IMG/VR virus record: IMGVR_UViG_3300045961_000282
Span: 1-64,000 of that record
DNA: 64,000 nt
Direction: 5' to 3' (one strand)
A program made the translations under genes and the position numbers. A model generated the notes under the pieces. It ran no database searches. It saw only the letters and a list, made by a program, of their open reading frames with translations, and was not told the DNA's origin. Shown piece by piece: positions 1,750 through 19,177 of this stretch; positions within the stretch are counted from its first letter, which is position 1; each line of letters opens with the position of its first letter.

Positions 1750-1771
1750 GCTAATACGTACGCACACGTCC

Positions 1772-1788: not shown

Positions 1789-1789
1789 G

Positions 1790-1829: not shown

Positions 1830-1840
1830 GTTGGGGTTGG

Positions 1841-6980: not shown

Positions 6981-7332
6981 CGATGCCCCCGATCCGGCGA
7001 ATCTCGGCCTCGATGTCATTGAGCATGTCGTGCTCACGGGCATCCATGCACCAGTGGGCCACATCGCCGGACCCCGCGGGGTCGTAGATCTTGTGCCAAC
7101 TGGCGACGTATGTCGCGATCTCCTCCGTGAGGGCGCGGCGGATGTCCGGCTCGGTGTCGGCGCAGCAGAACTCCAACGCCCTCGCCTGCTCCTCGGCGCG
7201 GATCACCGGCTCGATGGCATCGATCACCGCCTCGGCGAAATCCCAGTCGCTGTCGGCGTGGCCAACAATCCCCTTGCTCCGGTTGGCGACGATGCCCCGG
7301 ACTGCGATCTCCACCAGTTCCTGCCGGTTCAC
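6973..7332 (-). CDS. modular array protein (B-like and C modules)
   Basis: RQELVEIA ... EPVIRAEEQ. Confidence 0.7.
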   Translation of the reverse strand: MNRQELVEIAVRGIVANRSKGIVGHADSDWDFAEAVIDAIEPVIRAEEQARALEFCCADTEPDIRRALTEEIATYVASWHKIYDPAGSGDVAHWCMDAREHDMLNDIEAEIRRIGGIDG

Positions 7333-7679
7333 TCCACTCCCCCGATCTGTCGCACGTCCCAATCCACCACTCGCAGCGCGGCTGCATAGCCTTCGCGGTA
7401 CCGCTCGTCGGCGCCGAGCCGCGTCGATTCCACGTGCCTCTTCTCGATGGCCTGCACCATCTCCTCGGTCAGGTGCCGACGCTCCCTTGCAATGAACGAC
7501 GGGTCGCGCCACCCCAGTTCGATCATCTGCAACTGCACGGCAGGCTCGACCAGCGCGACGATCCGTTGGGCGATCGCGTCCGACGCGGCCCGGATTCCCT
7601 CCTTGTCGGTGATGTCCGAGAACAGGATCACCGACGCAGCCTCGCGCGACGCAGCCTCGATCAGTTCCTCGCGCGTCAC
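7329..7679 (-). CDS. modular array protein (B-like module)
   Basis: TREELIEAA; GTGA overlap. Confidence 0.7.
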   Translation of the reverse strand: MTREELIEAASREAASVILFSDITDKEGIRAASDAIAQRIVALVEPAVQLQMIELGWRDPSFIARERRHLTEEMVQAIEKRHVESTRLGADERYREGYAAALRVVDWDVRQIGGVE

Positions 7680-8068
7680 GGTGCGCCCCCTGCCCTGTGA
7701 ACGATGTCGGCATAGGTGCTGCACCGACAGGTGTAATCGTAATGCAGCAACTTGAATGGGCACTCGTCAACTACGGCCTTGCCGATTCGCTCTGTGACGG
7801 CGCTGCGCTCCTCGCTCAACAGGGTCGCAGCGATGTCGTTGGGGCTCCACAGGCATGAGCAGAGGTAGTTCAGCCCAGTGTCGTCCATCTCCCCGACGCC
7901 GCACGGCCCGCCGGGATTGGTGCCGTGCGGATCTATCCCATGCGAGCACGAAGGACACGTCACCACCGGCAGCGAGAATGGCTGGGGCGGGGCGGCAGAG
8001 CGCTCCCGTGCGCACCATGAACAGGGGCAGTCGGGATCGTGCGGGCCATCCATCGACGCGCGCCTCAT
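7676..8068 (-). CDS. Cys/His-rich small protein
   Basis: HDPDCPC, CPSCSH, CSC motifs; ATGA overlap. Confidence 0.65.
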   Translation of the reverse strand: MRRASMDGPHDPDCPCSWCARERSAAPPQPFSLPVVTCPSCSHGIDPHGTNPGGPCGVGEMDDTGLNYLCSCLWSPNDIAATLLSEERSAVTERIGKAVVDECPFKLLHYDYTCRCSTYADIVHRAGGAP

Positions 8069-8232
8069 TGCGCCACGCTCTGTCCGCGCTCCCACACCAC
8101 CGGATACTGCTGCCACGGCAGGTCCAGCAGCACCTTGATCACGAAGTCGGCGTCGACCGCGATGGCCGCGGTGAGGTTCGTGTAGATGCCGCACGGCGGC
8201 TCGCGGTCGTAGCAGGCGGCGTACAGGGCCAT
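8065..8232 (-). CDS. hypothetical protein
   Basis: MALYAAC; coupled. Confidence 0.55.
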   Translation of the reverse strand: MALYAACYDREPPCGIYTNLTAAIAVDADFVIKVLLDLPWQQYPVVWERGQSVAQ

Positions 8233-8405
8233 CAGTTCTCCCGTTCGGATGAGTTGGACAGGGCAGCGAAGAACCAGTCGGAATCTGGCGGCGCCGGGCG
8301 CTTGGCGCGCCTGCGGTCGGCGAACGCGAACAATACGCCCGAGACGAAGTCCCACACGATCACCAGCAGCGCCAGCGCCGCGACCAGCATGAGCAACTCG
8401 ATCAC
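8232..8405 (-). CDS. small membrane protein (57 aa, below ORF-track cutoff)
   Basis: MIELLMLVAALALLVIVWDFVSGVLFAF hydrophobic stretch; overlaps neighbours at both ends. Confidence 0.6.
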   Translation of the reverse strand: MIELLMLVAALALLVIVWDFVSGVLFAFADRRRAKRPAPPDSDWFFAALSNSSEREN

Positions 8406-8695
8406 AGCACCACCGCTTCCTCATCGTCATCGGCACTCAGCAGGTCCAGCACCTGACCCCGGACCCAGCGGGCCTCCGGGGTGTCGGCGGTCAGGGAACG
8501 CACCTTCGCGCGCAGCCCGATCAGGTCAGCGGTGAGCCGCCGGTTCGTCTGCTCCCAGAAGGAGATGGCCAGATCGGCCCGGTGCTTCTCGGCCTCGCGG
8601 GCGGCGTCGAGGTAGGAGCAGATGCACAGCACCGCCTCGTCGCCGGTCCCCACCTTGGCCATGTGGTCAAGGCACGCGGATTGATGTTCACTCAT
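8402..8695 (-). CDS. modular array protein (A+D+E)
   Basis: HQSAC..CIC; GLRAKVRSL; VLDLL..DEEA. Confidence 0.75.
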   Translation of the reverse strand: MSEHQSACLDHMAKVGTGDEAVLCICSYLDAAREAEKHRADLAISFWEQTNRRLTADLIGLRAKVRSLTADTPEARWVRGQVLDLLSADDDEEAVVL

Positions 8696-8883
8696 CGCTT
8701 GGGTTCCTCTGTCGTTGGCGGGGCAACCAGTAGGGTCGCGCGGTAGGTCGGTTCCGACGGGCAGCCGTTGGCCGCGCACCACTTGGCCAGCCGTCGCGCG
8801 GCGATGTCCGGCGGGAAACCGCGGCCATCCGGGGCGACCTGCACAACTCGACCACACAGGCGGCATGTCTGCGTGGCCATCAC
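8692..8883 (-). CDS. small Cys-motif protein
   Basis: CRLCG...CAANGC; coupled. Confidence 0.6.
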   Translation of the reverse strand: MMATQTCRLCGRVVQVAPDGRGFPPDIAARRLAKWCAANGCPSEPTYRATLLVAPPTTEEPKR

Positions 8884-9146
8884 AGGGCCTCATCGAACAC
8901 GGCAAGGACGCGCTGGTATCCGATGACTCCCAACCCACGGGGCAACGCCTCCACCTTCGCCCGCAGGTCTGCGCGGGTGGCCTCCACGATCCGCACTCGT
9001 TCCTCCAGCGTGAGCCCCGGCCCCTCGCGGACAGCGCGCCCCCGTTCGTCGGCGCGGATGCGGGCCACCCGTTCGCAGTCGCAGAACCGCGTCAGGTCGT
9101 CGGGCAGGAACTCCTGCGAGATGCACATCAGGTCGTGGTCACTCAT
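8880..9146 (-). CDS. modular array protein (A+C+D+E)
   Basis: HDLMC..CDC; IRADER; DLRAKVEAL; VLAVFDEA. Confidence 0.85.
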   Translation of the reverse strand: MSDHDLMCISQEFLPDDLTRFCDCERVARIRADERGRAVREGPGLTLEERVRIVEATRADLRAKVEALPRGLGVIGYQRVLAVFDEAL

Positions 9147-9472
9147 CGCCCTGATCTCCTCAGTTCATCCAGCACGGAATCGTGCGCCGACTTCCACACG
9201 TCCCGGATCAGCGCGTCGGCGGGCCGGGCGCGGTCGTCCGGGTCCGGCCCCTCGTGCATCCATGCGAGCAGGTGGAACGAGTCCATCCCGAGGAACGGCG
9301 GCGTGAGGTCTCGGGCGGCTGCCGCAGCGTCCTCCGCCCGTTGCCGCTCGCGCTCCACCACGCGAGCGATCAGGGCGCAGACGCATCCGAACTCGTGTGC
9401 ATAGCACAGCGGGTCATGGGCGAGTGTCTGCGACAGGTACTCGTCCCGCACCCACTTCTTGTCGGCGCTCAC
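9143..9472 (-). CDS. modular array protein (A)
   Basis: HDPLC..CVCALIARVVERER. Confidence 0.8.
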   Translation of the reverse strand: MSADKKWVRDEYLSQTLAHDPLCYAHEFGCVCALIARVVERERQRAEDAAAAARDLTPPFLGMDSFHLLAWMHEGPDPDDRARPADALIRDVWKSAHDSVLDELRRSGR

Positions 9473-9792
9473 GGCTGGGCCTCCTCATCGAGCAGGGCGA
9501 GAACGGCATCAACACGCACCGTATCGATCACCTTGCCTGACGGCACCCACCCGGTGCCGTTCAGCCACTCGTACTCCATGCGCACCGCGTGGGCGGGCAG
9601 CATCACCACCTTTGCCCGCAGGTCGGCGAGGCGTTCTCGTGCAGCATCTAACTCTGAGTTGAGGCGGTGAACTTCACGCGAGCAGTGCTCGCGCTGCTCC
9701 CGCTCGCGCTCCACCACGCGGGCGATCAGGGCGCAGGTGCACTGCAAGGTCAGCGCGGACGCAGCCGGACACGGGGCGTCATGTGCGTTCAC
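9469..9792 (-). CDS. modular array protein (A+D+E)
   Basis: HDAPC..CTCALIARVVERER; DLRAKV; VLALLDEEA. Confidence 0.85.
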   Translation of the reverse strand: MNAHDAPCPAASALTLQCTCALIARVVEREREQREHCSREVHRLNSELDAARERLADLRAKVVMLPAHAVRMEYEWLNGTGWVPSGKVIDTVRVDAVLALLDEEAQP

Positions 9793-10037
9793 TGGGCACC
9801 ACCCATGAACGAACGAGCGATCTGCTCAGCGACATCCAGCCCGTCGAGGTACCACTGGTCAGCCGTTGTCGGGCGCTCGCCGAACTCGGCCTTGTCGGAC
9901 TGGTACCGGGCGTCGATGGCCGCCGCGATCTCCTCGGCGACAGCGGCGCGGATAGCAGCGACGCGCTCGCAGTCGCAGAACGCCGGGTTGGTCCACGACG
10001 GGTCAGCGCAGCGGCACATGGGGTCGTGGTCACTCAC
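9789..10037 (-). CDS. modular array protein (A)
   Basis: MSDHDPMC..FCDCERVA. Confidence 0.8.
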   Translation of the reverse strand: MSDHDPMCRCADPSWTNPAFCDCERVAAIRAAVAEEIAAAIDARYQSDKAEFGERPTTADQWYLDGLDVAEQIARSFMGGAQ

Positions 10038-10234
10038 CGCTGGGCCTCATCGAGCAGGGCGAGGACGTCGGAGCGGAGCAGCAACTCGCTCCCGAGAACC
10101 TCCCACGACGGCAGTGCCTCCACCTTCGCCCGCAGGTCGGCGTAAACGCGGGCGATCAGGGCGCACTGGCAGTCGGGGTCGAAGGGATGGTCACGATTGG
10201 GCTTCCACGGACACAACGGATGGTGGGTGGTCAC
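10034..10234 (-). CDS. modular array protein (A+D+E)
   Basis: HHPLC..CQCALIARV; DLRAKVEAL; VLALLDEA. Confidence 0.85.
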   Translation of the reverse strand: MTTHHPLCPWKPNRDHPFDPDCQCALIARVYADLRAKVEALPSWEVLGSELLLRSDVLALLDEAQR

Positions 10235-10707
10235 GGCCGGGCCTCCTCGTCGCGTGGCGCGATGGCGGAGCATGCGTACCCGTTCCCGGCGAGGCTGTGA
10301 TCGATCGTGTGATCCGACCACCAGTGGCCGTACTCCTCGTCGTCGTGCGGGTCCAGCCGTTCACACTGGTACCCCCCGGACTCCCGGTACTCACAGACGA
10401 ACCGGACGGACCGGTCGGCCACCGGGCACCGGTACGGGCGCTCTCCAGCCTCCTCATCGAACAAGGCGAGGACCCATCTCAGTGCTGCGTTGGAGTGCTC
10501 GTGGGTCGTCGGCAGCAGTGCCTCCACCTTCGCCCGCAGGTCGAGCAGGATCTCCTCCCGAAGGCACGCGCGGGTCACCTCGACCATCTCGCCTTGGATG
10601 ATCGGCTGGACGGTGTCGTAGACGGCAGCGATGATCTCCCGATCCGGGTGGTCGAATTTCCCCACGGCCTGCATCGCGGCGTCGATAGCACGCTCGCGGG
10701 CCGTCAT
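10231..10707 (-). CDS. modular array protein (B+D+internal E, fused Cys/His tail)
   Basis: ARERAIDA; DLRAKVEAL; internal VLALFDEEA; second DEEA at end. Confidence 0.85.
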   Translation of the reverse strand: MTARERAIDAAMQAVGKFDHPDREIIAAVYDTVQPIIQGEMVEVTRACLREEILLDLRAKVEALLPTTHEHSNAALRWVLALFDEEAGERPYRCPVADRSVRFVCEYRESGGYQCERLDPHDDEEYGHWWSDHTIDHSLAGNGYACSAIAPRDEEARP

Positions 10708-11150
10708 GGCTTGGCCTCCTCATCGAACAGGGCGAAGACCTCATTGCGTTCGATCAGGGCGAATGTCGTCAACTCTCCGTCGATCATGCGCGCTCCAGTG
10801 CCGCGCGTCCGCAGCCCCTCCACCTTCGCCCGCAGGTCGGAGAGGCGGTCCTCCGCTCTGGCCGCGTCTGCCTGAGCAAGCCCCAGCGCCTCTACCGCTT
10901 CATCGCCGCGCCGCTGTTCGTCGGCGCGGATGATCGGCTCGGTTGCCGCGAGGACAGCCGCCGCGCGGCCCCGCGCCCAGTGGACCGCTGAGCACTCCCT
11001 CTCGGATTGATTGGCGAACGGCGCCCACTCGTCAACGAACAGGGTCGATTTGTGCGCCACGCAGACGTCTCCGAACCGCTTGCACGGGTTGTCGGTTCCT
11101 AGCAGGGCGTTCGCTCCAGCCTCAATGGCCCGCTCTCGGGCGCCGCTCAT
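10704..11150 (-). CDS. modular array protein (B+C+D+E)
   Basis: ARERAIEAG; EPIIRADEQ; DLRAKVEGL; VFALFDEEA. Confidence 0.85.
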   Translation of the reverse strand: MSGARERAIEAGANALLGTDNPCKRFGDVCVAHKSTLFVDEWAPFANQSERECSAVHWARGRAAAVLAATEPIIRADEQRRGDEAVEALGLAQADAARAEDRLSDLRAKVEGLRTRGTGARMIDGELTTFALIERNEVFALFDEEAKP

Positions 11151-11686
11151 CGTCCAACCTCGCAGTCGTACCGTTCCTCGTCCTTGATCCACACGCAGTT
11201 CTCATGCGTGTGCACGTAGTCCGGATTGTCGGCCTTCCCATCCAGCAGGGCGTCGATGGCCTCTGCCTCACGGCTGTCCCGCGGGTAGTCGCCAGCCTCC
11301 CCGCCCAACTCATCGAGCAGTTCAAGGGCCTTGGACTTCCAGCAGTCGCACGCTCGGCGCCGCCGACGGAGATCGCGCGGGCTGGCCCACGAGGCACACT
11401 CGTCCTCGCACAGTTCGCTCTGGATCTTCGTCCGCAGGTCGGTGAGGAATCCCTCGATCACCCGCGAGCACATGTGCGTCGCATCCGCCCTCCCCCGTTC
11501 ATCGGCTCGGATGATCGGCTCAGCGCCATCGAGAACCATACGCGCGATGCAGTCCGGGCAGTCCGCGACGCTTTGCGGATCCCATGTTCCCGCGCCGTGC
11601 TCGGGGATCATGCACTTCTCCCTGCGCCATCGCGCGGCGAGGTTGCTCGCCCCGGCCTCGACGGCGCAAACGCGGGCGTCGCTCAT
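11147..11686 (-). CDS. modular array protein (B+C+D+E)
   Basis: DARVCAVEAG; EPIIRADER; DLRTKIQ; ALELLDE. Confidence 0.85.
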   Translation of the reverse strand: MSDARVCAVEAGASNLAARWRREKCMIPEHGAGTWDPQSVADCPDCIARMVLDGAEPIIRADERGRADATHMCSRVIEGFLTDLRTKIQSELCEDECASWASPRDLRRRRRACDCWKSKALELLDELGGEAGDYPRDSREAEAIDALLDGKADNPDYVHTHENCVWIKDEERYDCEVGR

Positions 11687-11770
11687 TTCCGACCCTTCCC
11701 TGCTAGGAACTTCTGGTACGGGTGCCACGGCCCTGCCGAGTACCGGCGCGATGCCATCAGCGCCAACCGG

Positions 11771-12250
11771 TCATGTCGCGTCATCGATGGCTCCGTCATC
11801 AAGCAGGGAAAGGAGGTCATCGACAGCCGCGCGATAACCGACATTCCAAGGGCCAATCCCCTCTGACGCGGTCACCTTCGGCAGCGCCTCCACCTTTGCC
11901 CGCAGATCGGCAACGACGGTGCGACGGACTCCGACTTGGTAGTCGGCGTACACCTGTTCATCGACTGCGCGCCAAGCGCGAAATGCATCGTCAAGGATGA
12001 TCCGCTCGACCGCGTCAAGGACGGTGACGGCGATGGCCCGACGATCCCAGCCACCCTTGAACGTCGCCATCGCCTCCGACCCGGCCTCGATGGCCCGCTC
12101 GCGTGCATCGCCCATCGTCGATCTCTCCGCTCGACCGTCCTGCTCAGGCACGGGCCCCGGCCACGGCACCTCACCGAGCACCGGGCACCGGCCATCGCCG
12201 ACCAGACAGCCGTCCGGCATGCAGTCCATGTGGAGCCGAAGGTCACTCAT
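11771..12250 (-). CDS. modular array protein (Cys N-extension + B+D+E)
   Basis: Internal MGDARERAIEAG at 12115; DLRAKVEAL; LLSLLDD. Confidence 0.8.
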   Translation of the reverse strand: MSDLRLHMDCMPDGCLVGDGRCPVLGEVPWPGPVPEQDGRAERSTMGDARERAIEAGSEAMATFKGGWDRRAIAVTVLDAVERIILDDAFRAWRAVDEQVYADYQVGVRRTVVADLRAKVEALPKVTASEGIGPWNVGYRAAVDDLLSLLDDGAIDDAT

Positions 12251-12599
12251 CGCCAGTCTCCTTGTCCAGCAGGGCGAGGACTTCGCGCAGGGCCACAGCC
12301 GCACCCACGTCGAACGTGTCGTGCGACACCACATACTCGGCGTCGCGTTCTTCAAGCAGTGCCTGCACCTTCGTCCGCAGGTCGGCGTAGATGTGGGCCC
12401 GAGATTCGATCTCGATCGTGGCTGCCAACTCCTCTGCCCACATGCTGCGGCGCTGACGGGAGAGCACGGCCTCCCGCTCGTCGGCGCGGATCACCGGCTC
12501 GGCGGCTTCGACGGCGGCTTCGACTCCGCCACGGATGTCGCTTGCCTTCAACCACGCTTGCCATCCAGCCTCGATGGCGTCGTCGCGGGCGTCGCTCAT
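12243..12599 (-). CDS. modular array protein (B+C+D+E)
   Basis: DARDDAIEAG; EPVIRADER; DLRTKVQAL; VLALLDKE. Confidence 0.85.
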   Translation of the reverse strand: MSDARDDAIEAGWQAWLKASDIRGGVEAAVEAAEPVIRADEREAVLSRQRRSMWAEELAATIEIESRAHIYADLRTKVQALLEERDAEYVVSHDTFDVGAAVALREVLALLDKETGDE

Positions 12600-12811
12600 G
12601 TCAGGGCATCCTCTCGGGCACGACGGTTCTGCACGACGGTGAGCCGGAATGCCACGTTCAGTGGCAGGTCGGACGTGAACTGGCCCAGTGAGATGACCCC
12701 CACCAGACCGGAGAAAATCTCCGCCGATCCGACCAGTACGCCCCACTGGGCGCGACGCAGGAACGGCCTGCTGTGTGCGTGCCGCCACGTGGGCGTGAGC
12801 AGGCCCTTCAC
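12596..12811 (-). CDS. small putative membrane protein
   Basis: Coupled at both ends; hydrophobic core. Confidence 0.6.
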   Translation of the reverse strand: MKGLLTPTWRHAHSRPFLRRAQWGVLVGSAEIFSGLVGVISLGQFTSDLPLNVAFRLTVVQNRRAREDALT

Positions 12812-13203
12812 GACTCCTCGCCCTTTTCCGGTACCACGCCAGACCCCTCATCGAGCATCGCGAGGACGCTGGCTAGGGAGCAGCAGCACGACAGCGCATA
12901 CGGCGCGTACGACAGGTAGCACGCCTCCGGGTGCTCTAGCCCGTCCACCTTCGCCCGTAGGTCGGCGAGGAGGGTCTCGCGGGCCTCGCGCTCCAGTTCG
13001 GGGAGCGAGCGCCGCCAGACCTCGCCGTCGATCTTGACCTGCGCGATCTGCTCGTCGGCGCGGATGATCGGCTCGACGGCGGCGAGAATCGTCTCCGCTG
13101 TCTCATACGCCTCCGCGATCGTCTGGCTGACGTAGTTGTCGCGGCGTCCGGAAAGCCACGCCCTCGCTCCGGCCTCGATGGCCTGCTCGCGTGCGTCACT
13201 CAT
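12808..13203 (-). CDS. modular array protein (B+C+D+A-like+E)
   Basis: DAREQAIEAG; EPIIRADEQ; DLRAKVDGL; HPEAC..CCC; VLAMLDE. Confidence 0.85.
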   Translation of the reverse strand: MSDAREQAIEAGARAWLSGRRDNYVSQTIAEAYETAETILAAVEPIIRADEQIAQVKIDGEVWRRSLPELEREARETLLADLRAKVDGLEHPEACYLSYAPYALSCCCSLASVLAMLDEGSGVVPEKGEES

Positions 13204-13507
13204 GATCGACCACCTCCCACTCTCCAACCAACCGTCGCTCGATGCGCAGGTTTGGTTTGCCCCCGGAGTGCCGAGCACCCATGCGAACGATCTTCAGTCC
13301 GCGCAGGGCCTCCTCGAATGTCCTGAGCCTGCCTGCCACTCGACGCTCGTGGCCACCGTCCATCTTTGGGTCGCCGTCATAGACGATCTCGTACTCCCAC
13401 GCCTGCGTGGCGTCGGCCTTGGCCCGCTCGTCGTCGAGAGCGATTGGGGCGCACTCGCACCACTGCTCTGGTACATGACACTGGCACATCGGGTCGGGAT
13501 CACTCAT
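13196..13507 (-). CDS. modular array protein (A + DGDP-MDG/LRIERR module)
   Basis: MSDPDPMCQC..CEC; C-terminal module shared with 15576-16172. Confidence 0.8.
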   Translation of the reverse strand: MSDPDPMCQCHVPEQWCECAPIALDDERAKADATQAWEYEIVYDGDPKMDGGHERRVAGRLRTFEEALRGLKIVRMGARHSGGKPNLRIERRLVGEWEVVDHE

Positions 13508-13871
13508 CTCCGACCTCCTGCTCGAAGAGGGCGAGAACGGCGTCAAAACCGTCCGTGCGCCCGTTGTGCCACGTCGGAATGATGGCGTCCATGTGCCCAC
13601 CGCTGGCCTGCCTGCGGCTGGCGACGGACTCCTCGCGCAGCACTTCCACCTTCGCCCGTAGATCGGCGAGGACGTCACGCTGAGCGCTGTTCCGAGCATC
13701 GTGGACGACTTGCGTCCACTCGGGCAGCGTCATCCGTTCCCGCTCGTCGGCGCGGATGATCGGTTCTGCTGCGTCGATGACGGCAGCGAGGACTGCTGGA
13801 AGATCGAACGGGCTCAGGCCCGACACTGCCCTCGCCCCGGCCTCGATGGCCTGCTCGCGTGCGTCACTCAT
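13500..13871 (-). CDS. modular array protein (B+C+D+E)
   Basis: DAREQAIEAG; EPIIRADER; DLRAKVEVL; VLALFEQE. Confidence 0.85.
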   Translation of the reverse strand: MSDAREQAIEAGARAVSGLSPFDLPAVLAAVIDAAEPIIRADERERMTLPEWTQVVHDARNSAQRDVLADLRAKVEVLREESVASRRQASGGHMDAIIPTWHNGRTDGFDAVLALFEQEVGDE

Positions 13872-14106
13872 TTCCAACCTCCAGAGGCTCGTTGCCCTTC
13901 GGGTCCCATGGCCGGTGCCAGCGGACGCCCATCCAGAGGAATCCCTTGCACTGCTTCGGGTTCTTCCGGGTGCCTTTGCCGCCGAACTGGCAGCCGCGCT
14001 CCGGATAGACCCCGTGACATCCGTTCTCGTCGTGGCGGAACGCCATGTGCCCGCAGTCGTCGCAGAGCGCGCCGGGGCCGTACGGCTGCTCGGGTGCGTC
14101 ACTCAT
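13864..14106 (-). CDS. Cys/His small protein (CxxCGH zinc-binding-like)
   Basis: CDDCGH..H..GC..C..C. Confidence 0.7.
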   Translation of the reverse strand: MSDAPEQPYGPGALCDDCGHMAFRHDENGCHGVYPERGCQFGGKGTRKNPKQCKGFLWMGVRWHRPWDPKGNEPLEVGNE

Positions 14107-14401
14107 TGCCAGCCTCCTCATCGAACGCGGCGAGAACTTCGGCGCGGTTCACCGCTGGCTCAGAGCCCATGTTCCATGTCAGCAGCCCCTCCACCTTCGC
14201 TCGCAGATCAGCGAGTAGGGCAGCACGCTCCCGTGGGTACAGGTCTACCCATTCCGCCATTTGCTCCCGCTCGTCGGCGCGGATGATCGGATCGATGGCT
14301 TCGTTGAGCATCTCGGCCAGCGCGCCGTCACCGATGGTCTTGTCGAACCGGGCAACTTCCAGCACGCGGCGCAGGGCGGTCAGTGGATCGCGGTCGGTCA
14401 T
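14099..14401 (-). CDS. modular array protein (C+D+E)
   Basis: DPIIRADER; DLRAKVEGL; VLAAFDEEA. Confidence 0.85.
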   Translation of the reverse strand: MTDRDPLTALRRVLEVARFDKTIGDGALAEMLNEAIDPIIRADEREQMAEWVDLYPRERAALLADLRAKVEGLLTWNMGSEPAVNRAEVLAAFDEEAGNE

Positions 14402-14661
14402 GGTTTTCCCTCGGCAATCATTGCGGCCCACTCCGTGTCGTTGGCGAAATCGGAGGGAGTCTCCGCGTCGAGACGCAGGGGACGCCTGCGGTCCGGGTCG
14501 GCTGCGACGGCCCGGATCTCTGCGGCGATCTGCGCGCGCAGAGCCTTCTCCACCACGTCGACCACGGCCAGCCATGGGGTGTCACGATCCATGACGCGGC
14601 TCTTGGGGAAGTCGAGGTAGGCCCGGCGCGCCGCCGCCGCGACCTGCTCTCGTGTCGTCAT
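14398..14661 (-). CDS. modular array protein (B-like)
   Basis: TREQVAAAA; LRAQIAAEI. Confidence 0.7.
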   Translation of the reverse strand: MTTREQVAAAARRAYLDFPKSRVMDRDTPWLAVVDVVEKALRAQIAAEIRAVAADPDRRRPLRLDAETPSDFANDTEWAAMIAEGKP

Positions 14662-14999
14662 TTGACATCTCCGATCAGGTGTTCGGACAACGCGCGGGCC
14701 AAGGGTTCGATGTCGGCCGCCAGCGATTGGGGGATCCCATTCACGAACCAGTCGGCGTATACATCGGGCACGAATGTGCAGTTCTTCGGGTCGTCGCATT
14801 CATGGGCATCGAAGGCGTCCGCGCCCTCCTGTGCGAGGTCGCGCATGATCGCCGTGAGCCGCTCGGGGGACACGATCTCGCGGAGCGCCGCGTTCACGAC
14901 CTCCACCGACACGTCGATGGCGGGCCACCGCCGCCAGTCACCCGAGTGCCGATCCAGCGCCCGCGCCCCCGCAGCGTATCCGTCCTGTCGGGCTGTCAT
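14658..14999 (-). CDS. hypothetical protein
   Basis: MTARQDGY; coupled. Confidence 0.65.
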   Translation of the reverse strand: MTARQDGYAAGARALDRHSGDWRRWPAIDVSVEVVNAALREIVSPERLTAIMRDLAQEGADAFDAHECDDPKNCTFVPDVYADWFVNGIPQSLAADIEPLARALSEHLIGDVK

Positions 15000-15166
15000 G
15001 CCTGTCCCCCTCTGGTGCGATAACGCAAACGGTTCATGTGGGCACGTTGCACGGCGCGGCGCCTGACGGTCCAGACCCAGAACACCGTCTTGGGCCGGGC
15101 ATCGTCCGGCTCGCGCCACGGAATGACGATCGCGACGCTGCCCCGTCGCTGGTAACGGAAGGTCAC
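14996..15166 (-). CDS. small basic protein (56 aa, below cutoff)
   Basis: GTGA/ATGA overlaps at both ends fill the gap exactly. Confidence 0.55.
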   Translation of the reverse strand: MTFRYQRRGSVAIVIPWREPDDARPKTVFWVWTVRRRAVQRAHMNRLRYRTRGGQA

Positions 15167-15579
15167 GGCTGGGCCTCCCCGAGCATGTCGCTGACCATTT
15201 CGAGCGCGGCCACGTAGCCCGCCGCGAACTGCGCCGCGGGCTCGGGGGCGTCGCCGTGCGAATGTGGGCGCAGCGCCTCCACCTTCGCCAACAGGTCGCC
15301 AATGAGTTCGCGGCGGACGTGTGTGGGCAGGTGGTCGATGTGGTTCTCAAGTTCCTCGATGGTCCCTCGGGCACGCGCCCGCTCCTCGTCGCGAGCAATC
15401 GCCCAGACGGCATCGACGACGGCACCCGCCAACGCATCGCGCGCGATGGGGAGCAGGGACAGGGCGCCCAACACCCCACCCGCAGCCTCGATGGCGCGCT
15501 CACGGGCCGGGGCCGCGATGGGTTGTGGGGTGCAGTCGCTGCACGGGCAGTAGGTGCCATGGCCGACGCTGTACGTCAC
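15163..15579 (-). CDS. modular array protein (Cys motif + B+C-like+D)
   Basis: HGTYCPC; ARERAIEAAG; IARDEER; DLLAKVEAL. Confidence 0.8.
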   Translation of the reverse strand: MTYSVGHGTYCPCSDCTPQPIAAPARERAIEAAGGVLGALSLLPIARDALAGAVVDAVWAIARDEERARARGTIEELENHIDHLPTHVRRELIGDLLAKVEALRPHSHGDAPEPAAQFAAGYVAALEMVSDMLGEAQP

Positions 15580-16172
15580 GACTGCACCTCCCACGGCCCG
15601 ACGACGCGGCGCTCGATGCGCAGGTTGACCTTGGGGTCGTGCGTGCTGCGCAGAACCACGCTGTCATACGCGGCGCGCGCATTCGACAGTGTGGTGAACG
15701 GACCGCCGATCTGGCGGCGGGCGTAACTGCCGTCCATCCGTGGGTCGCCGTCGCAGACGATGACCCACTCCTGCTGCACGGTGGCCGAAGGGCTGGCCGC
15801 ATCGAGGGGGCCGAACAGGACTTCGGCGATGCCGACGACGTAGCCCGCGGCGTGCATCCGCTGGCCGTAACCATACGGATCCTCGCGCATGTCCTCGACC
15901 GGCTTCAGTGCGTCCCGCTTGCCCTTGGCCTCGGTCAGCATCTCGTCGACCTTCCCCTGAAGGTTGGCCAGCAGGGTGGTCTGAATGGCCGAGCGCATCC
16001 GCGGCCACGTCGACTCGGCGGCGCGCCGCCCCTCTTCGTAGAAGGTCGGCTCCACGATGTCGATCACCGCGTCGGCCATGTCGCCAAAGGTCGCCGCATC
16101 CCCCTTCGCGTCGATCACGCGCATCAGCGCCTTGATGCTGCGGGCGCGCGCGTTTCTGCGGGCGGTGCTCAT
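15576..16172 (-). CDS. modular array protein (divergent B/C/D + DGDP-MDG/LRIERR module)
   Basis: ARARSIKA; NLQGKVDEM; C-terminus similar to 13196-13507. Confidence 0.75.
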   Translation of the reverse strand: MSTARRNARARSIKALMRVIDAKGDAATFGDMADAVIDIVEPTFYEEGRRAAESTWPRMRSAIQTTLLANLQGKVDEMLTEAKGKRDALKPVEDMREDPYGYGQRMHAAGYVVGIAEVLFGPLDAASPSATVQQEWVIVCDGDPRMDGSYARRQIGGPFTTLSNARAAYDSVVLRSTHDPKVNLRIERRVVGPWEVQS

Positions 16173-16474
16173 GCGTCCCCTCCGGTGTACTTCTTGAGTC
16201 GTTCGTTCTGGCTGCGGCCAAGGTTCGGGCACCCATCCCGTCGGTGCTTGGCCACCCCGCTGTTGGACACGAACCGCGCCCCGCATGTCTGGCAGGCGCA
16301 CGGGTGCCCCCCCAGATGGCGGGCCTGCCACAGCATCGGCCGCTCCACGCCGTCGTAGCCGGTGGCGCCACAGGTCAGGCAGGACACTCGCGCGCTCTGG
16401 CCGAGGTACGCGAACTGGTCGCGCCATCCCTCGGGCGGGTTGAGCATGATGCGCCGGGCATCGACGTCCCTCAT
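16169..16474 (-). CDS. zinc-finger protein (C2H2-like)
   Basis: CLTCG; HPCACQTCGARF....VAKH. Confidence 0.65.
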   Translation of the reverse strand: MRDVDARRIMLNPPEGWRDQFAYLGQSARVSCLTCGATGYDGVERPMLWQARHLGGHPCACQTCGARFVSNSGVAKHRRDGCPNLGRSQNERLKKYTGGDA

Positions 16475-16884
16475 CGCTCCCCCTCCCGACCGGGGATGTT
16501 GGCCAGCAGCCACCTGACGACGGCCCGGTCGTGGATCCACCAGTCGTAGAGACTGTTGCTCGACAGGTCGAGGGCAACCACGGCCTCAACAGGGGAGTCG
16601 AACCACCGGATCTGGTTACGCAGGTCGTAGCACAGCGACACCATCTCCGACCAGTCGGCAGAGTCGTCGTCCGGGAACGGAGTCGCGGCCTCGAAGGCGT
16701 CGCAGCCCGAGCACGACCCGTACCCGATGACGCTGATGCCGAACCGATCTCCGTCGGACAGGATGTAGACCTCGTCGCCCTGCCACGAACCGAACCGCTC
16801 CGAAGCGGTGATCTCATAGCCCCACGACGCGACAAGACCCCCCAGCGAGGGGTCCACCTCGTACCAGTCAGGCTTCGAAATCAC
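16471..16884 (-). CDS. conserved-type phage hypothetical protein
   Basis: GSWQGD and GYGSCSGCD motifs. Confidence 0.7.
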   Translation of the reverse strand: MISKPDWYEVDPSLGGLVASWGYEITASERFGSWQGDEVYILSDGDRFGISVIGYGSCSGCDAFEAATPFPDDDSADWSEMVSLCYDLRNQIRWFDSPVEAVVALDLSSNSLYDWWIHDRAVVRWLLANIPGREGER

Positions 16885-16889
16885 CCATG

Positions 16890-16901
16890 AAGCATAGCAC
16901 G
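16890..16901 (-). promoter_or_regulatory. extended -10 promoter CGTGCTATGCTT
   Basis: TGnTANNNT; identical 12-mer at 22257-22268; lies in a short intergenic gap. Confidence 0.65.
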
Positions 16902-16902
16902 G

Positions 16903-17157
16903 TCATGTGTCAGGACAGACACACGGCAGGTCGCAGACGTGCCTGTCCCGCTCGTCGGTGCGGATCTTGGCCTCAAGGCGCTGCAGCCACCCGTCGCAGA
17001 TGTGCTCGCCCCACGACGCAAGGTCATGGTTGATCGTTCCGATCGTCGCCGACAGCCCCGCCACCGCGTCGTGGGCCTCGCACATCGGGATCGCCCACTC
17101 CAAGTCCTCCGCCGGGTTGCGGCAGCCCGGGACGGCGCAGGGGACTTCTTCAGGCAT
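16903..17157 (-). CDS. Cys-rich small protein with C-like module
   Basis: CAVPGC..CEAH; IRTDER. Confidence 0.65.
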   Translation of the reverse strand: MPEEVPCAVPGCRNPAEDLEWAIPMCEAHDAVAGLSATIGTINHDLASWGEHICDGWLQRLEAKIRTDERDRHVCDLPCVCPDT

Positions 17158-17341
17158 CCTCGACCAGCCGCCGGATCGCCACCAGCACGTCACCTAAGGC
17201 GTCGACTGCACCGTTGCAATACTCCGCTGGCTGACGGTCGTTGAGGCGCCGGTTGCGCCACACATCGCGCAGCAACTCGACCTGCACCTGTACCTCGGTG
17301 AACGCGTCGTCGCGGGCGACGATTGCCTTGTCAATCTCCAC
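17150..17341 (-). CDS. hypothetical protein
   Basis: Coupled ORF. Confidence 0.6.
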   Translation of the reverse strand: MEIDKAIVARDDAFTEVQVQVELLRDVWRNRRLNDRQPAEYCNGAVDALGDVLVAIRRLVEDA

Positions 17342-17780
17342 TAGTGCTCAACCTCTCTCGCATCTGGTCCCACAACCGAACGTCGCCGAACTCATGGGTC
17401 ATCACCTCGCGCCCCAGCAGCGCCTCCGCGCGACGATGGAACTCCTCGGTCGGCAGCGCAAGCGAACCCGTCAGCACCGAGGCGCGGAACGCATCGGCCA
17501 GCGCCTTCTCGGCCTCGGCGCGAACCATAGGCATCACGGCATCGATGACGGTGCTCGCCACGAGGAACCAGTCCGGCCGCCCGTTGCGCAGCGTCGGCGG
17601 CCCGTCGAACATCCGCTCACGCAACTGCGCGACGGCAGCGGTGATCTCCGGGGTCCACTCATCAAGGGACACGTCGCAGGAGATGCACACCTGATGCGCG
17701 CCGCCGATGGTGCAGTGGAAGTTGCCGCACTCGATCCGCTCGGTGGGGCCGTTGCAGCCGGGGCACTCAGGCATCGTCAT
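17331..17780 (-). CDS. zinc-ribbon + C-like module protein
   Basis: CPGC..C..HC..CISC; VIDAVMPMVRAEAE. Confidence 0.7.
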   Translation of the reverse strand: MTMPECPGCNGPTERIECGNFHCTIGGAHQVCISCDVSLDEWTPEITAAVAQLRERMFDGPPTLRNGRPDWFLVASTVIDAVMPMVRAEAEKALADAFRASVLTGSLALPTEEFHRRAEALLGREVMTHEFGDVRLWDQMRERLSTSGD

Positions 17781-18090
17781 CCCATCGGTGACCCTCGGGC
17801 AGGGGGCCGGTGTAGTCGTCGCGCAGCATGCACCGCACGTGTGGCTGCACATGGCTCTTGCACGCGGGACAACAGGTCCGGACGTAGCCGCCTTGGACCT
17901 CCATCTTGTGGTGCGCCATGCGCTCGCGCACCTTGGCGACCGCCACCATCGCCTCGTTCTGCTCGGGGGCAACCCAGCCGTCGGCGACCAGTCGCTTGCG
18001 CTCCCGCTCGGCGACCATGAGGATGAAGTCGCACCGGCAGGGCTCGTAGACCCCAGTGGTGACGCACGGGCAGAACTCATCATGCGACAA
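17767..18090 (-). CDS. modular array protein (A)
   Basis: TTG start after AAGGAG; HDEFCPC..CRCDFI..ERER. Confidence 0.7.
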   Translation of the reverse strand: MSHDEFCPCVTTGVYEPCRCDFILMVAERERKRLVADGWVAPEQNEAMVAVAKVRERMAHHKMEVQGGYVRTCCPACKSHVQPHVRCMLRDDYTGPLPEGHRWDDDA

Positions 18091-18289
18091 GGTGGTGCTC
18101 CTTCTCGTCGATGATGATGAACCGCAGCGGCAGGTAGATGCGGCTCTCGTAGAACCGTACCGCGCCCTTGGCGCTCCGCCGCAGGTAGAACCGCTGGGGA
18201 TCCTCGTTGAAGGTGTCAGCGAGGCGCTGGTTGAACTCCCAGTTCTCCCCCTGCAGCGGCACGGCATGCAGCCGCCAGCGCTTCGTCAC
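18080..18289 (-). CDS. hypothetical protein
   Basis: Coupled ORF. Confidence 0.6.
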   Translation of the reverse strand: MTKRWRLHAVPLQGENWEFNQRLADTFNEDPQRFYLRRSAKGAVRFYESRIYLPLRFIIIDEKEHHLVA

Positions 18290-18516
18290 GGCTGCTCGAT
18301 CCGCGCCGCCGCCCAGCGCAGCGCCGCTGCGTGGGTCTCGATCTGCACCTTGGGGTGGCGCCCGCGCACGGCGAAGTTAGCCACCACGGCCTGCTCCCGC
18401 AGGTCGGTGGCGATCTGTCGGCGCAGGTGCGCCTCGGCATCCCGCAGCAGGTCGCACTGGCAATCGTCGTGCCCGCTGTGGGGCTCCTGCGGGCACATCG
18501 GGTGGTGATCAAACAT
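18286..18516 (-). CDS. modular array protein (A + D-like)
   Basis: HHPMC..DCQCDLL; DLREQ. Confidence 0.75.
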   Translation of the reverse strand: MFDHHPMCPQEPHSGHDDCQCDLLRDAEAHLRRQIATDLREQAVVANFAVRGRHPKVQIETHAAALRWAAARIEQP

Positions 18517-18772
18517 CGTCGGTCTCGGTCATCCTGAGGAACTCGGTCAGCGAATCGCGGATCTCGCGGGCCTGCTCCCGGGTCAGGTGGGCAACGGCGC
18601 GGGTCCGATCGCTGTCGATGACCCTCAACCATACGAAGGGGCCCTCGATGATCTCGCGGGGCCCGACGACCGCGACCGCGCTCGATTCCTGCACCTCGAT
18701 GGTCTCGCCGCCGGTTCCGCGCACGCGAGCGAACCCGACCAGCCCGCGGGGTCCGGTGAACGTGTCAGACAT
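18509..18772 (-). CDS. hypothetical phage protein
   Basis: VQESSA..VWL..AHLTREQA motif. Confidence 0.7.
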   Translation of the reverse strand: MSDTFTGPRGLVGFARVRGTGGETIEVQESSAVAVVGPREIIEGPFVWLRVIDSDRTRAVAHLTREQAREIRDSLTEFLRMTETDDV

Positions 18773-18962
18773 CGCTGCTCCTCGTGCGCCCCAGATGCAG
18801 GTAGGCCATGACCTCGTCGCGACGGAAGCGCCGATGCCCACCGGGCGTGACGATCACCGACAGCCTGCCGGTGTTCGCCCAGCGGGTCACCGTCTTGGGG
18901 TCGACTCCGAACATCCGAGCGACCTCGACGGGCCGCAGCAGTTCACGATCCTTGGGAATCAT
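18765..18962 (-). CDS. BldC-like MerR/Xis-type winged-HTH DNA-binding protein
   Basis: LLRPVEVARMFGVDPKTVTRWA..G.L....TPGGHRRF closely matches the actinobacterial BldC signature. Confidence 0.85.
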   Translation of the reverse strand: MIPKDRELLRPVEVARMFGVDPKTVTRWANTGRLSVIVTPGGHRRFRRDEVMAYLHLGRTRSSDV

Positions 18963-19177
18963 TTCCGGTCCTTCCGTTCAGCCTGAGCGGCTTCGAGCAG
19001 AACGCCTGCGGCAGCGTACAAGCGGTTCGCAGCCCCGGGGTGCAGGGAGCCGACGGAGTCCGCCAGCGCCTCGGCCTGCTCGGCGTAGGTGCCCAACAGC
19101 GACGCCCGCAGGCCCACATGGGCAGCGCACCAGCGCTTGTGGGCCCCCTCGCCGCGACAGCCGCCGCAGTCGCTCAC
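18959..19177 (-). CDS. hypothetical protein
   Basis: CGGC..HKRWC; coupled. Confidence 0.6.
   Translation of the reverse strand: MSDCGGCRGEGAHKRWCAAHVGLRASLLGTYAEQAEALADSVGSLHPGAANRLYAAAGVLLEAAQAERKDRK

What the first reader, a model, noticed from the sequence alone, without database searches (positions are those of the whole stretch)
8949..15297. Module blocks are near-identical DNA repeats, including synonymous sites
Seen: CTCCACCTTCGCCCGCAGGTC (D) is exact at 8949, 10118, 10522 and 10818, with 2-3 mismatches at 9604, 11888, 12363, 12943, 13644, 14189 and 15277. A 37-bp block at 9344-9380 and 9700-9736 differs by 1 nt. A 44-bp gene-start block at 13160-13203 and 13828-13871 differs by 1 nt. 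Flanking sequence is unrelated. Inference: recent gene conversion or short-homology recombination. The SSAP/exonuclease pair at 42832-45608 is a candidate engine, since Rad52/Sak-type annealases are known to use short, imperfect homology.
Basis: partly seen in the sequence, partly recalled or inferred. Interest (0 to 1): 0.65.

Follow-up and report, generated by a model that had tools for sequence, protein, structure and literature searches.

The report
Mosaic small-gene array in jumbo phage
The repeated 21-base motif is the coding sequence of a conserved peptide (D-L-R-A-K-V-E) shared by about 14 tandem copies of an uncharacterised small helical phage protein. The copies match at silent codon positions more than codon bias explains, which points to recombination at these short blocks, but the effect is moderate and the general phenomenon is already known.

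Summary
The D motif occurs 11 times with 3 or fewer mismatches (0 expected), all on one strand and only in this array of the 206-kb phage genome. The 37-nt and 44-nt blocks each differ by 1 nt.

The genes lie on the minus strand. D is the in-frame codon string for D-L-R-A-K-V-E in tandem paralogues of a four-helix, roughly 100-130 aa protein family with no Pfam or PHROG match. The genes are mosaics of conserved peptide modules (N1, M, D, C and Cys motifs) separated by unalignable segments.

At identical amino acids in the blocks, codons match in 0.71-0.73 of pairs against about 0.50 expected (z=7.6). Variable columns sit on the null.

Just under half of that excess is also seen against homologues from other metagenomic phage contigs (0.56 vs 0.46). 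The remainder is specific to this genome (permutation 0/1000), which looks like concerted evolution.

Cross-contig mosaics break exactly at the M and D modules. Exact identity is short: the longest run is 35 nt, and 8 pairs reach 23 nt.

The proposed engine has weak support. The annealase candidate gives a weak RAD52/Mgm101/Sak fold match, the neighbouring gene is an exonuclease, and nothing shows a link to the array.

Verdict: real, partly supported, moderately interesting.

The parts
7129..19365 (-). Full extent of family-profile hits: 14 places, all in this stretch of the 206-kb genome
   Evidence: profile A1 against the window's own genome
8402..8695 (-). Divergent family member (ADLIGLRAKV variant of D)
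8880..9146 (-). Gene g9146: Cys motif Z + RADE + D + C modules
9143..9472 (-). Gene g9472: Cys motif Y (C.CALIARVVERER), no D module
9469..9792 (-). Gene g9792: Y + D + C. Its D-to-C segment resembles that of L009/P0005
9789..10037 (-). Gene g10037: Z motif only
10034..10234 (-). Gene g10234: Y-like + D + C (66 aa)
10231..10707 (-). Gene g10707: N1-M-D-C member that reads on into a 70-aa Cys/His-rich tail
10704..11150 (-). Gene g11150: N1-M-D-C. Its D-to-C segment resembles L005:2284-2565
11147..11686 (-). Gene g11686: N1-M-D(variant), long C-terminal extension
11771..12250 (-). Gene g12250: Cys-rich leader fused to an N1-D-C member (internal Met at 12115)
12243..12599 (-). Gene g12599: N1-M-D-C
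12808..13203 (-). Gene g13203: N1-M-D-C
13196..13507 (-). Gene g13507: Z-like start + W domain (paralogue of the C-terminus of 15576-16172)
13500..13871 (-). Gene g13871: N1-M-D-C. Modelled as four helices (pLDDT 84), with D in the middle of the long helix 3
14099..14401 (-). Gene g14401: alternative N-terminus + M-D-C. The N-terminal 46 aa are 78% identical to L004:396-701, then unrelated right after M
15163..15579 (-). Gene g15579: N1-like + D (DLLAKVEAL) + C-like
15576..16172 (-). Gene g16172: weak family N-terminal part (ANLQGKVDEM) + W domain
8949..8969 (-). D block, exact copy (codons GAC CTG CGG GCG AAG GTG GAG on the minus strand)
9604..9624 (-). D block, 2 mismatches
10118..10138 (-). 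D block, exact. Part of a 29-nt exact repeat with 10515-10543
10522..10542 (-). D block, exact
10818..10838 (-). D block, exact
11888..11908 (-). D block, 2 mismatches
12363..12383 (-). D block, 2 mismatches (both change the peptide: RTKVQ)
12943..12963 (-). D block, 2 mismatches. Shares the rare Leu codon CTA with 13644-13664
13644..13664 (-). D block, 3 mismatches
14189..14209 (-). D block, 2 mismatches
15277..15297 (-). D block, 2 mismatches (Arg replaced by Leu)
13160..13203 (-). 44-nt gene-start block (MSDAREQAIEAGAR), 43/44 identical to 13828-13871, including a 35-nt exact run
13828..13871 (-). Partner of the 44-nt gene-start block
9344..9380 (-). 37-nt Y block (CALIARVVERER), 36/37 identical to 9700-9736
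9700..9736 (-). Partner of the 37-nt Y block
13738..13763 (-). M block (PIIRADERE), 26-nt exact repeat with 14265-14290. Shorter exact copies lie at 10918-10941, 13050-13075 and 12471-12491
42832..43551 (+). 239-aa protein proposed as the annealase. No Pfam or PDB sequence match. The AF2 model has a beta-beta-beta-alpha core, and the best Foldseek hits are RAD52, Mgm101 and 80alpha Sak
43548..45608 (+). Exonuclease (PHROGs 1674, 35747, 1706) interrupted by an intein-like insert. It overlaps the preceding gene by 4 nt

Best explanation
The region is a tandem array, on the minus strand, of about 14 paralogues of an uncharacterised small (roughly 65-180 aa) all-helical phage protein family. The array sits in the early or replication-side part of a 206-kb phage genome assembled from a freshwater sediment metagenome.

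Each 'module block' is the codon string of a conserved peptide motif:
- N1: MSDAREQAIEAGA
- M: EPIIRADERE
- D: ADLRAKVEAL
- C: VLALLDEE
- two alternative Cys-motif N-termini

The segments between the motifs are unalignable and of different lengths.

Shown:
- The blocks are more alike at synonymous sites than codon bias predicts.
- The excess is larger among paralogues of this genome than against homologues from other phage contigs.
- Homologues from other contigs share whole variable segments with individual window genes, and the similarity stops at a module.

Inferred: the short conserved blocks act as crossover points for homology-dependent exchange, namely gene conversion, unequal crossing-over within the array, and exchange with related co-infecting phages. 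This exchange reassorts the variable segments and keeps the blocks partly homogenised (concerted evolution).

Part of the conservation at the C/N1 junction has a different cause that is shown directly. The last codons of one gene encode the ribosome-binding site, and the stop/start codons of adjacent genes overlap (ATGA, GTGA, ATGAGTGA).

The phage's own Rad52-like annealase/exonuclease pair is a plausible catalyst but has not been tested. The function of the proteins is unknown; my guess is host-takeover or anti-defence proteins under diversifying selection.
For: - The motif is in-frame codons of paralogues.
- Codon-bias null: 420/579 same-codon sites in runs of 5 or more identical residues, against a simulated mean of 292.9, sd 16.7, max 338.
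- HMM-aligned set of 43 copies from 12 contigs. Conserved columns: within window 0.706 (expected 0.488), window vs others 0.562 (0.464), others vs others 0.555. Variable columns: 0.43-0.455, close to the null of 0.45. Within minus between = 0.100, permutation 0/1000. The whole pairwise distribution is shifted, median 0.71 vs 0.56.
- Site-specific codons run against preference. Arg in D is CGG in 10/13 copies (usage 0.30). Val in KVE is GTG although Val before Glu is GTC in 0.64 of cases genome-wide. Leu in VLAL is CTC in 7/8 (usage 0.29). Asp in C is GAT in 7/8 (usage 0.26). The Ala in RAK is GCG in 9/12 window copies but GCC or GCA, never GCG, in other contigs.
- Abrupt tracts: 43/44 nt and 36/37 nt followed by unalignable sequence of different length. 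Single-pair P is 2e-3 and 1e-3.
- Mosaics: g14401 vs L004 (78% identity over 45 aa, ending at M); g11150 vs L005 (from D onward); L005 vs L003 (32 aa with 28/29 identical codons, flanks unrelated).
- The synonymous similarity of those shared variable segments across contigs (64/106 = 0.60) is no higher than that of modules across all paralogues. Modules therefore coalesce about as recently as orthologous segments.
- Exact identity reaches the 23-27 bp minimal pairing length reported for Red-beta in 8 pairs (PMC3945230).
- Junction dual coding: 20 of 22 junctions overlap by 4 or 8 nt, with GGAGG or GAGG in the upstream C-terminal codons.
Against: - No direct product of recombination was seen. 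Only Logan contigs of the probable source sample were available. The 'joints' there have 21-25-nt sides at low depth and are best read as other organisms' family genes.
- Two other arrays (L005 and L011, 7 copies each) show no within-array excess (0.51-0.53). Homogenisation is therefore not a general property of the family, and a more recent expansion in this lineage is an alternative.
- Some window D blocks keep synonymous variants of their cross-contig counterparts (g13871 GAT/GAA as in L008; g9792 GCA as in L009). Conversion, if any, is incomplete.
- Distances in different modules are mostly uncorrelated, but the test is underpowered.
- No close relative of the phage was available for an orthologue-by-orthologue comparison.
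Confidence: 0.55

Rival explanations
1. Plain paralogy without recombination. The array arose by duplication. Peptide motifs are held by purifying selection, linkers drift or are replaced, and the synonymous excess only reflects incomplete saturation plus a somewhat more recent expansion in this lineage.
For: The excess is moderate: 0.71 vs 0.49, corresponding roughly to 0.6 substitutions per synonymous site. Just under half of it is also seen between contigs. The other arrays, L005 and L011, show no within-array excess. Some ortholog-specific synonymous variants persist in the blocks.
Against: The variable segments of window paralogues are unalignable with each other. Yet they are 52-78% identical to particular genes on other contigs. 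The paralogues therefore predate the split, while the block synonymous signatures are genome-specific. The 98% identical tracts end abruptly in sequence of different length, which uniform divergence cannot produce.
Confidence: 0.25
2. The blocks are kept at the nucleotide level because the DNA or RNA itself is functional. Possibilities include an internal Shine-Dalgarno-like pause site (AAGGTGGAGG in D), a regulator or nuclease recognition site, or an mRNA structure.
For: Val in KVE is GTG in all 8 copies from other contigs and in 12/14 window copies, against the context preference. With the next codon this creates GGAGG. CTC in VLAL is also family-wide. The C/N1 junction is demonstrably dual-coded for the ribosome-binding site and stop/start overlap.
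Against: The motif occurs nowhere outside homologous in-frame positions of the paralogues in the 206-kb genome. Copies with changed residues lose the GGAGG (g9792, g12599, g11686). No consistently spaced start codon follows D. The genome-specific variants (CGG GCG here, CGC GCC elsewhere) show that the exact sequence is not required.
Confidence: 0.12
3. Assembly artefact: repeats collapsed or chimerically joined in a metagenome assembly.
For: Logan contigs of the source run break at the 44-nt repeat (13051-13174 and 13842-13866).
Against: Independent contigs tile the region with 0 differences and even depth of about 12-15. All repeats are 44 nt or shorter, well below read length. All 22 genes keep open frames and regular 4- or 8-nt overlaps. 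Similar arrays occur on contigs from other samples.
Confidence: 0.03

Closest known systems
gp38 adhesins of T-even phages: hypervariable segments separated by conserved glycine-rich motifs (PMC3157838)
   Same: Conserved short coding motifs alternate with hypervariable segments. [quoted passage not shown] Here, cross-contig mosaics break at the M and D modules.
   Different: gp38 is one virion gene compared between phages. Here there are about 14 tandem paralogues of a small helical non-structural protein within one genome, with a within-genome (concerted) component. There is no sequence or fold relation.
PeSL mobile regulatory cassettes in T4-type hyperplastic regions (PMC2839356, PMC4122927)
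   Same: Short repeated sequences flank small ORFan genes in a plastic region. They are proposed, and shown by inverse PCR mini-circles, to mediate homologous shuffling.
   Different: PeSLs are intergenic promoter plus stem-loop elements. Here the genes overlap by 4-8 nt, there is no intergenic space, and the repeats are in-frame codons. No circles have been shown.
Relaxed homologous recombination by Rad52-like phage recombinases (PMC3945230)
   Same: A phage-encoded annealase/exonuclease pair sits next to a mosaic region. Exact runs of 23-35 nt match the reported Red-beta minimal pairing segment of 23-27 bp.
   Different: That work measured exchange over hundreds of bp of diverged homology in lambda. 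Activity of this protein is untested, and its family assignment rests on a weak fold match.
Concerted evolution of tandem multigene families by gene conversion or unequal crossing-over (general knowledge)
   Same: Tandem paralogues whose conserved parts are more alike within a genome than between genomes.
   Different: Homogenised tracts are only 20-45 nt long and limited to motif-coding blocks. The rest of each gene is unrelated.
Stoperators and start-associated sequences of mycobacteriophages (general knowledge, not tested against data here)
   Same: A short asymmetric motif repeated many times in one orientation in an actinophage-like, GC-rich genome.
   Different: Those are repressor-binding or translation-start sites at gene boundaries throughout a genome. 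D lies mid-gene, in frame, only in paralogues, and nowhere else in 206 kb.

Membership tests
Tandem multigene family under concerted evolution (gene conversion / unequal crossing-over) | Paralogues in tandem, same orientation | tested here: met
   14 profile hits at 7.1-19.4 kb, all on the minus strand. Chain of overlapping ORFs.
Tandem multigene family under concerted evolution (gene conversion / unequal crossing-over) | Silent-site similarity of paralogues within a genome exceeds that to homologues in other genomes | tested here: met
   0.706 vs 0.562 in conserved columns, permutation 0/1000. Variable columns sit at the null. The regex-module version gives 0.721 vs 0.640, permutation 10/2000.
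Tandem multigene family under concerted evolution (gene conversion / unequal crossing-over) | Patchy tracts with abrupt ends; discordance between tract and flank relationships | tested here: inconclusive
   There are two clear tracts (43/44 and 36/37 nt; single-pair P 2e-3 and 1e-3) and a reticulate nearest-neighbour pattern. The tracts are very short, the Mantel tests are underpowered, and some blocks keep ortholog-specific variants.
Tandem multigene family under concerted evolution (gene conversion / unequal crossing-over) | Direct recombination products (deletion, duplication or converted variants in the population) | tested here: inconclusive
   Only contigs of the source run were available. 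The joints have sides of 25 nt or less and low depth.
Rad52/Sak-type single-strand annealing protein (for 42832-43551) | Sequence-profile match to a known SSAP family | tested here: not met
   No Pfam family even at E 5. No PDB sequence hit at E 1. The only match is PHROG 23738, of unknown function.
Rad52/Sak-type single-strand annealing protein (for 42832-43551) | Rad52-like beta-beta-beta-alpha DNA-binding core | tested here: inconclusive
   The AF2 model has pLDDT 86 with strands 28-73 followed by helix 84-104. The top Foldseek hits are RAD52, Mgm101 and 80alpha Sak, at E 5e-3 to 9e-2, probability 0.9-1.0, TM 0.25-0.38.
Rad52/Sak-type single-strand annealing protein (for 42832-43551) | Adjacent cognate exonuclease | tested here: met
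   43548-45608 matches exonuclease PHROGs 1674 and 35747 and overlaps the candidate by 4 nt.
Rad52/Sak-type single-strand annealing protein (for 42832-43551) | Ring oligomer and strand-annealing activity | not testable with these tools
   Needs biochemistry.
PeSL-type mobile regulatory cassettes | Repeat is an intergenic promoter plus stem-loop | tested here: not met
   The repeats are in-frame codons. 20 of 22 gene junctions overlap by 4-8 nt, leaving no intergenic space.
Regulator-binding repeats (stoperator-like) | Sites spread over the genome at gene boundaries, independent of coding homology | tested here: not met
   All 11 copies lie at homologous in-frame positions of paralogues. There are none elsewhere in 206 kb.
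Known protein family for the array genes | Match to Pfam, PHROGs, GenBank phages or a solved fold | tested here: not met
   Pfam and PHROGs give nothing significant. tblastn against 50,697 phage records gives no hit. Foldseek PDB best E is 0.9. The Atlas search gives only generic helical hairpins. 376 metagenomic cluster representatives are all unnamed.

The most novel reading that the evidence does not exclude
The array could be a standing diversification locus. Conserved 20-45-nt codon blocks would serve as built-in joints. The phage's own Rad52-like annealase/exonuclease would continually reassort variable helical segments among tandem copies and between co-infecting relatives. The result would be population-level combinatorial diversity in a host-interaction or anti-defence protein family, a phage counterpart of cassette-based antigenic variation.
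Probability: 0.1. Interest if true: 0.75.

Novelty: new member of a known kind. Interest (0 to 1): 0.4.

Why it matters
If the blocks really are recombination joints, this is a clean natural case of sub-gene module shuffling in a phage accessory-gene family. It has a measurable concerted-evolution signal and a candidate phage-encoded recombinase. It bears on the long-running question of whether phage mosaicism comes from homologous exchange at short conserved sequences or from illegitimate recombination plus selection. It also flags an unannotated family (376 cluster representatives, no Pfam or PHROG model) that recurs as tandem arrays in uncultured GC-rich phages. Its expansion suggests a host-interaction role. 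If the simpler paralogy reading is right, this is an ordinary expanded gene family.

Tried and rejected
- Megablast of the region and tblastn of a member against GenBank phages: no match.
- IMG/VR scans with a single protein and with an alignment: pattern hits but no confirmed relative. The first alignment was too diverse to seed a scan.
- Pfam and PHROGs on ten members: only sub-threshold noise.
- Foldseek PDB and Atlas on the family model: only generic helical hairpins such as HisKA and DksA-like coiled coils, which say nothing about function.
- Reads: a single run, the probable source, kept as contigs. Its joints were rejected as evidence because their sides are 21-25 nt at low depth. There is no verdict on deletion or duplication variants.
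- Mantel-type correlation of module distances: underpowered, with 6-8 genes per comparison.
- A first HMM-column codon tally had an offset bug, giving values around 0.07. It was discarded and redone.
- D as an internal translation start: the spurious 178-aa ORF from the GTG at 8938 has no support, and there is no consistent spacing to a start in other copies.
- Codon bias and neighbour-dependent codon bias as the full explanation: rejected.
- Chimeric assembly: judged unlikely.

Full report
**1.

The 21-mer CTCCACCTTCGCCCGCAGGTC is exact at 8949, 10118, 10522 and 10818. It has 2-3 mismatches at seven more places. All copies are on the + strand, against 0.00 expected in 100 dinucleotide-preserving shuffles. 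The window is the first 64 kb of a 206,257-bp IMG/VR virus record (linear, CheckV 99% complete, 65.7% GC). The motif occurs nowhere else in that genome.

A self-BLASTN confirms the other two blocks:
- 13871-13828 vs 13203-13160, 43/44 nt
- 9736-9700 vs 9380-9344, 36/37 nt

The repeats are short. The longest exact run is 35 nt. Only 18 exact direct-repeat pairs of 20 nt or more exist in the array: 8 reach 23 nt, 2 reach 27 nt and 1 reaches 31 nt. Identity decays within about 15 nt of each core.

**2. What the blocks are**

The genes here run on the minus strand as a chain of small ORFs. Of 22 junctions, 20 overlap by 4 or 8 nt (ATGA, GTGA or ATGAGTGA). On that strand the D motif reads GAC CTG CGG GCG AAG GTG GAG, in frame, giving D-L-R-A-K-V-E at homologous positions of paralogous proteins.

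All-against-all BLASTP and a profile search show one family with 14 places between 7.1 and 19.4 kb. Members are mosaics of these modules:
- N1: MSDAREQAIEAGA
- M: EPIIRADERE
- D: ADLRAKVEAL
- C: VLALLDEE
- alternative Cys-motif N-termini: Z (as in g9146, g10037, g13507) or Y (C.CALIARVVERER, as in g9472, g9792, g10234)
- a separate W domain shared by g13507 and g16172

The sequence between modules differs in length and cannot be aligned. The 44-nt block is the N1 start of g13203 and g13871. The 37-nt block is the Y motif of g9472 and g9792.

An AlphaFold2 model of g13871, built from a 17-sequence alignment, has pLDDT 84. It consists of four helices, with D in the middle of a 41-residue helix.

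**3. The family is unannotated**

- Pfam and PHROGs give nothing significant.
- GenBank phages give no hit.
- PDB and Atlas fold searches return only generic helical hairpins.
- A word search found five JGI metagenome proteins.
- The exhaustive profile search found 376 cluster representatives at E <= 1e-3, of which 98 are at <= 1e-10. All ten sampled representatives are metagenomic and unnamed.
- On their contigs the genes sit among small early or replication-region phage genes, next to DnaB-like AAA_25, Toprim, methylase, Metallophos, GP88 and Thy1. They are often in tandem: L005 and L011 carry 7 copies each, L004 and L010 carry 3 each, and L001 and L003 carry 2 each.

**4.

I estimated codon usage from 123 long ORFs with a strong GC3 signature, leaving out the array.

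- At identical, aligned residues of array paralogues, the same codon is used in 420 of 579 sites (0.725) inside runs of 5 or more identical residues.
- 500 synonymous resamplings give a mean of 292.9, sd 16.7 and max 338 (z = 7.6).
- Isolated identities are near the null: 0.516 vs 0.475.
- Array-specific codon usage is nearly the same as the genome's.
- Neighbour-dependent usage does not rescue the null, because the blocks go against it. Val before Glu is GTC in 0.64 of cases, yet KVE uses GTG. Val before Leu is GTG in 0.62, yet VLAL uses GTC. Ala before Lys is GCC in 0.66, yet RAK uses GCG.
- The same amino acid takes different fixed codons in different blocks. Arg is CGG in D (10/13) but CGC in M (6/7). 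Leu is CTC at VLAL position 2 (7/8) but CTG in D.

Block identity is therefore higher than amino-acid conservation plus GC3 bias predicts.

**5. Is it this genome or the whole family?**

I aligned 43 copies from 12 contigs to one profile and split the columns by conservation.

| Comparison | Same-codon share, 24 conserved columns | Expected |
|---|---|---|
| Within the window | 0.706 | 0.488 |
| Window vs other contigs | 0.562 | 0.464 |
| Other vs other contigs | 0.555 | 0.455 |
| Within other contigs | 0.543 | 0.454 |

- In the 62 variable columns every class lies at 0.43-0.455, on the null of about 0.45. This serves as an internal control for the null.
- Within minus between is 0.100, and 0 of 1000 label permutations reach it.
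- The whole distribution of window pairs is shifted, with median 0.71 vs 0.56.
- A simpler regex-anchored version gives 0.721, 0.640 and 0.617, with permutation 10/2000.

So just under half of the excess is family-wide and the remainder is specific to this genome.

Genome-specific silent signatures are visible by eye. D is CGG GCG here, CGC GCC in L003 and L005, CGG GCC in L002 and L008, and CGG/CGA GCA in L001 and L009. The Asp of C is GAT in 7/8 window copies but mostly GAC elsewhere.

The two other large arrays, L005 and L011, do not show a within-array excess (0.51-0.53). Homogenisation is therefore a feature of this array, not of the family.

**6. Evidence for exchange at the blocks**

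- g14401 and L004:396-701 are 78% identical over the first 45 residues, variable part included. They become unrelated directly after M.
- g11150 and L005:2284-2565 are alike from D to the C-terminus (67%), with unrelated N-termini.
- g9792 shares its D-to-C segment with L009. g13871 shares its D-to-C segment with L002 and L008.
- L005:2284 and L003:2460 share 32 residues from M through D, with 28 of 29 degenerate codons identical. The flanks are unrelated.

The window paralogues' variable segments therefore have closer relatives on other contigs than inside the window, while their blocks carry the window's silent signature. That is what conversion, or cassette import by crossover inside the blocks, predicts. 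A recent burst of duplication does not predict it.

Across contigs, shared variable segments have a same-codon share of 64/106 = 0.60 (expected 0.47). This is no higher than blocks compared across all paralogues.

The two named tracts have single-pair probabilities of 2e-3 and 1e-3 under the codon null. The 44-nt pair shares rare codons: GCA (0.10), AGG (0.07) and AGT (0.05). The same pair also shares the rare Leu codon CTA in D.

**7. Caveats**

- AGT in MSD is forced by the overlapping stop of the upstream gene (GAG TGA inside ATGAGTGA). The GAG GAG GC codons of the C tail are the ribosome-binding site of the next gene. Part of the junction conservation is therefore dual coding, not recombination.
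- Some D blocks keep silent variants of their cross-contig counterparts.
- Module-to-module distance correlations are mostly absent, but they rest on 6-8 genes.
- Only one sequencing run holds the region. It is the probable source (freshwater sediment) and is kept as contigs. Those contigs tile the region without differences, break at the 44-nt repeat, and show only short-sided, low-depth joints that I attribute to other organisms' family genes. I report no verdict on deletion or hybrid forms.

**8. The proposed engine**

- 43548-45608 matches exonuclease PHROGs and carries an intein-like insert.
- The 239-aa product of 42832-43551 has no Pfam or PDB sequence match and falls in a PHROG of unknown function.
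- With a 33-sequence alignment it models at pLDDT 86, with a strand-strand-strand-helix core. Its best Foldseek hits are human RAD52, yeast Mgm101 and the 80alpha Sak annealase, but only at E 5e-3 to 9e-2.
- The pair is plausible as an annealase/exonuclease module.
- De Paepe et al. report minimal pairing segments of 23-27 bp for Red-beta and 31-34 bp for RecA (PMC3945230). Eight block pairs reach 23 nt and one reaches 31 nt.
- Nothing links the pair to the array.

**9. Comparison with known systems**

The closest designs are two:
- The T-even gp38 adhesins have conserved glycine-rich motifs that separate hypervariable segments, and exchanges fall in or near the conserved motifs (PMC3157838).
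- The PeSL cassettes of T4-type hyperplastic regions have repeats that flank ORFans and yield mini-circles (PMC2839356).

This case differs from both. The repeats are intragenic codons of a tandem family inside one genome, and there is a concerted-evolution signal. It is not a member of the PeSL or stoperator kinds, because the repeats are not intergenic, not genome-wide and not independent of coding homology.

**10. Verdict**

The repeat is real and non-random. The codon-bias refutation fails. The recombination reading is the best supported one, at about 0.55 by my estimate, but it is inferred and not shown. The effect is moderate and limited to tracts of 20-45 nt.

I file it as a new member of a known kind: an expanded mosaic phage gene family with exchange at conserved motifs. 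Interest is 0.4.

Noticed in passing
window 43548-45608 (+): The exonuclease gene (PHROGs 1674, 35747, 1706) appears to be split by an intein-like insert. Pfam Intein_splicing matches residues 156-466 but falls below the curated cut-off.
   Followed up: partly
L001:10001-10354 (JGI contig Ga0671656_0000028): A family gene of about 61% GC sits in a 100-kb phage contig of 45-50% GC. A second family member lies just upstream (9742-10008). This looks like an import from a GC-rich phage.
   Followed up: partly
G000:C1 145671, 147816, 162944, 164032, 174661, 178941, 183515, 185316, 188661 (outside the window): A 20-27-nt motif containing TACCAACAC recurs, often preceded by GTGCTA. It is probably a promoter or regulatory repeat of the right arm of the genome.
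   Followed up: no
window 39855-40830, and G000:C1 66.7-67.6 kb and 91.5-93.0 kb: Collagen-like GGCCCTGCGGGCCC-type repeats and 26-27-nt exact matches are shared between tail-fibre-like genes (40068-40868 hits tail fibre PHROGs).
   Followed up: no
window 10231-10707 and 11771-12250 (-): Two in-frame fusions occur inside the array. g10707 reads through its usual C-terminus into a 70-aa Cys/His-rich tail. g12250 has a 45-aa Cys-rich leader before an internal Met (12115) that starts a normal family member.
   Followed up: partly
window 13196-13507 and 15576-16172 (-): A second paralogue pair shares a roughly 66-aa C-terminal domain (WEYEIVYDGDP...NLRIERR..G.WEV), blastp 2e-14. It has been joined to different N-terminal modules.
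   Followed up: partly
window 8402-16172 (-): 20 of 22 gene junctions overlap by 4 or 8 nt, with a GGAGG or GAGG encoded in the last codons of the upstream gene. This suggests translational coupling along the whole array.
   Followed up: yes
window 433-4213 (-): An N6/N4 DNA methylase (433-1860) overlaps a 790-aa protein with a weak HATPase_c_3 match (1841-4213) at the left end of the genome.
   Followed up: no
window 13051-13174 and 13842-13866: Logan contigs of the source run break exactly at the two copies of the 44-nt block. Assemblers with k around 31 cannot resolve this repeat. The gene order between the two copies rests on the IMG/VR assembly.
   Followed up: partly
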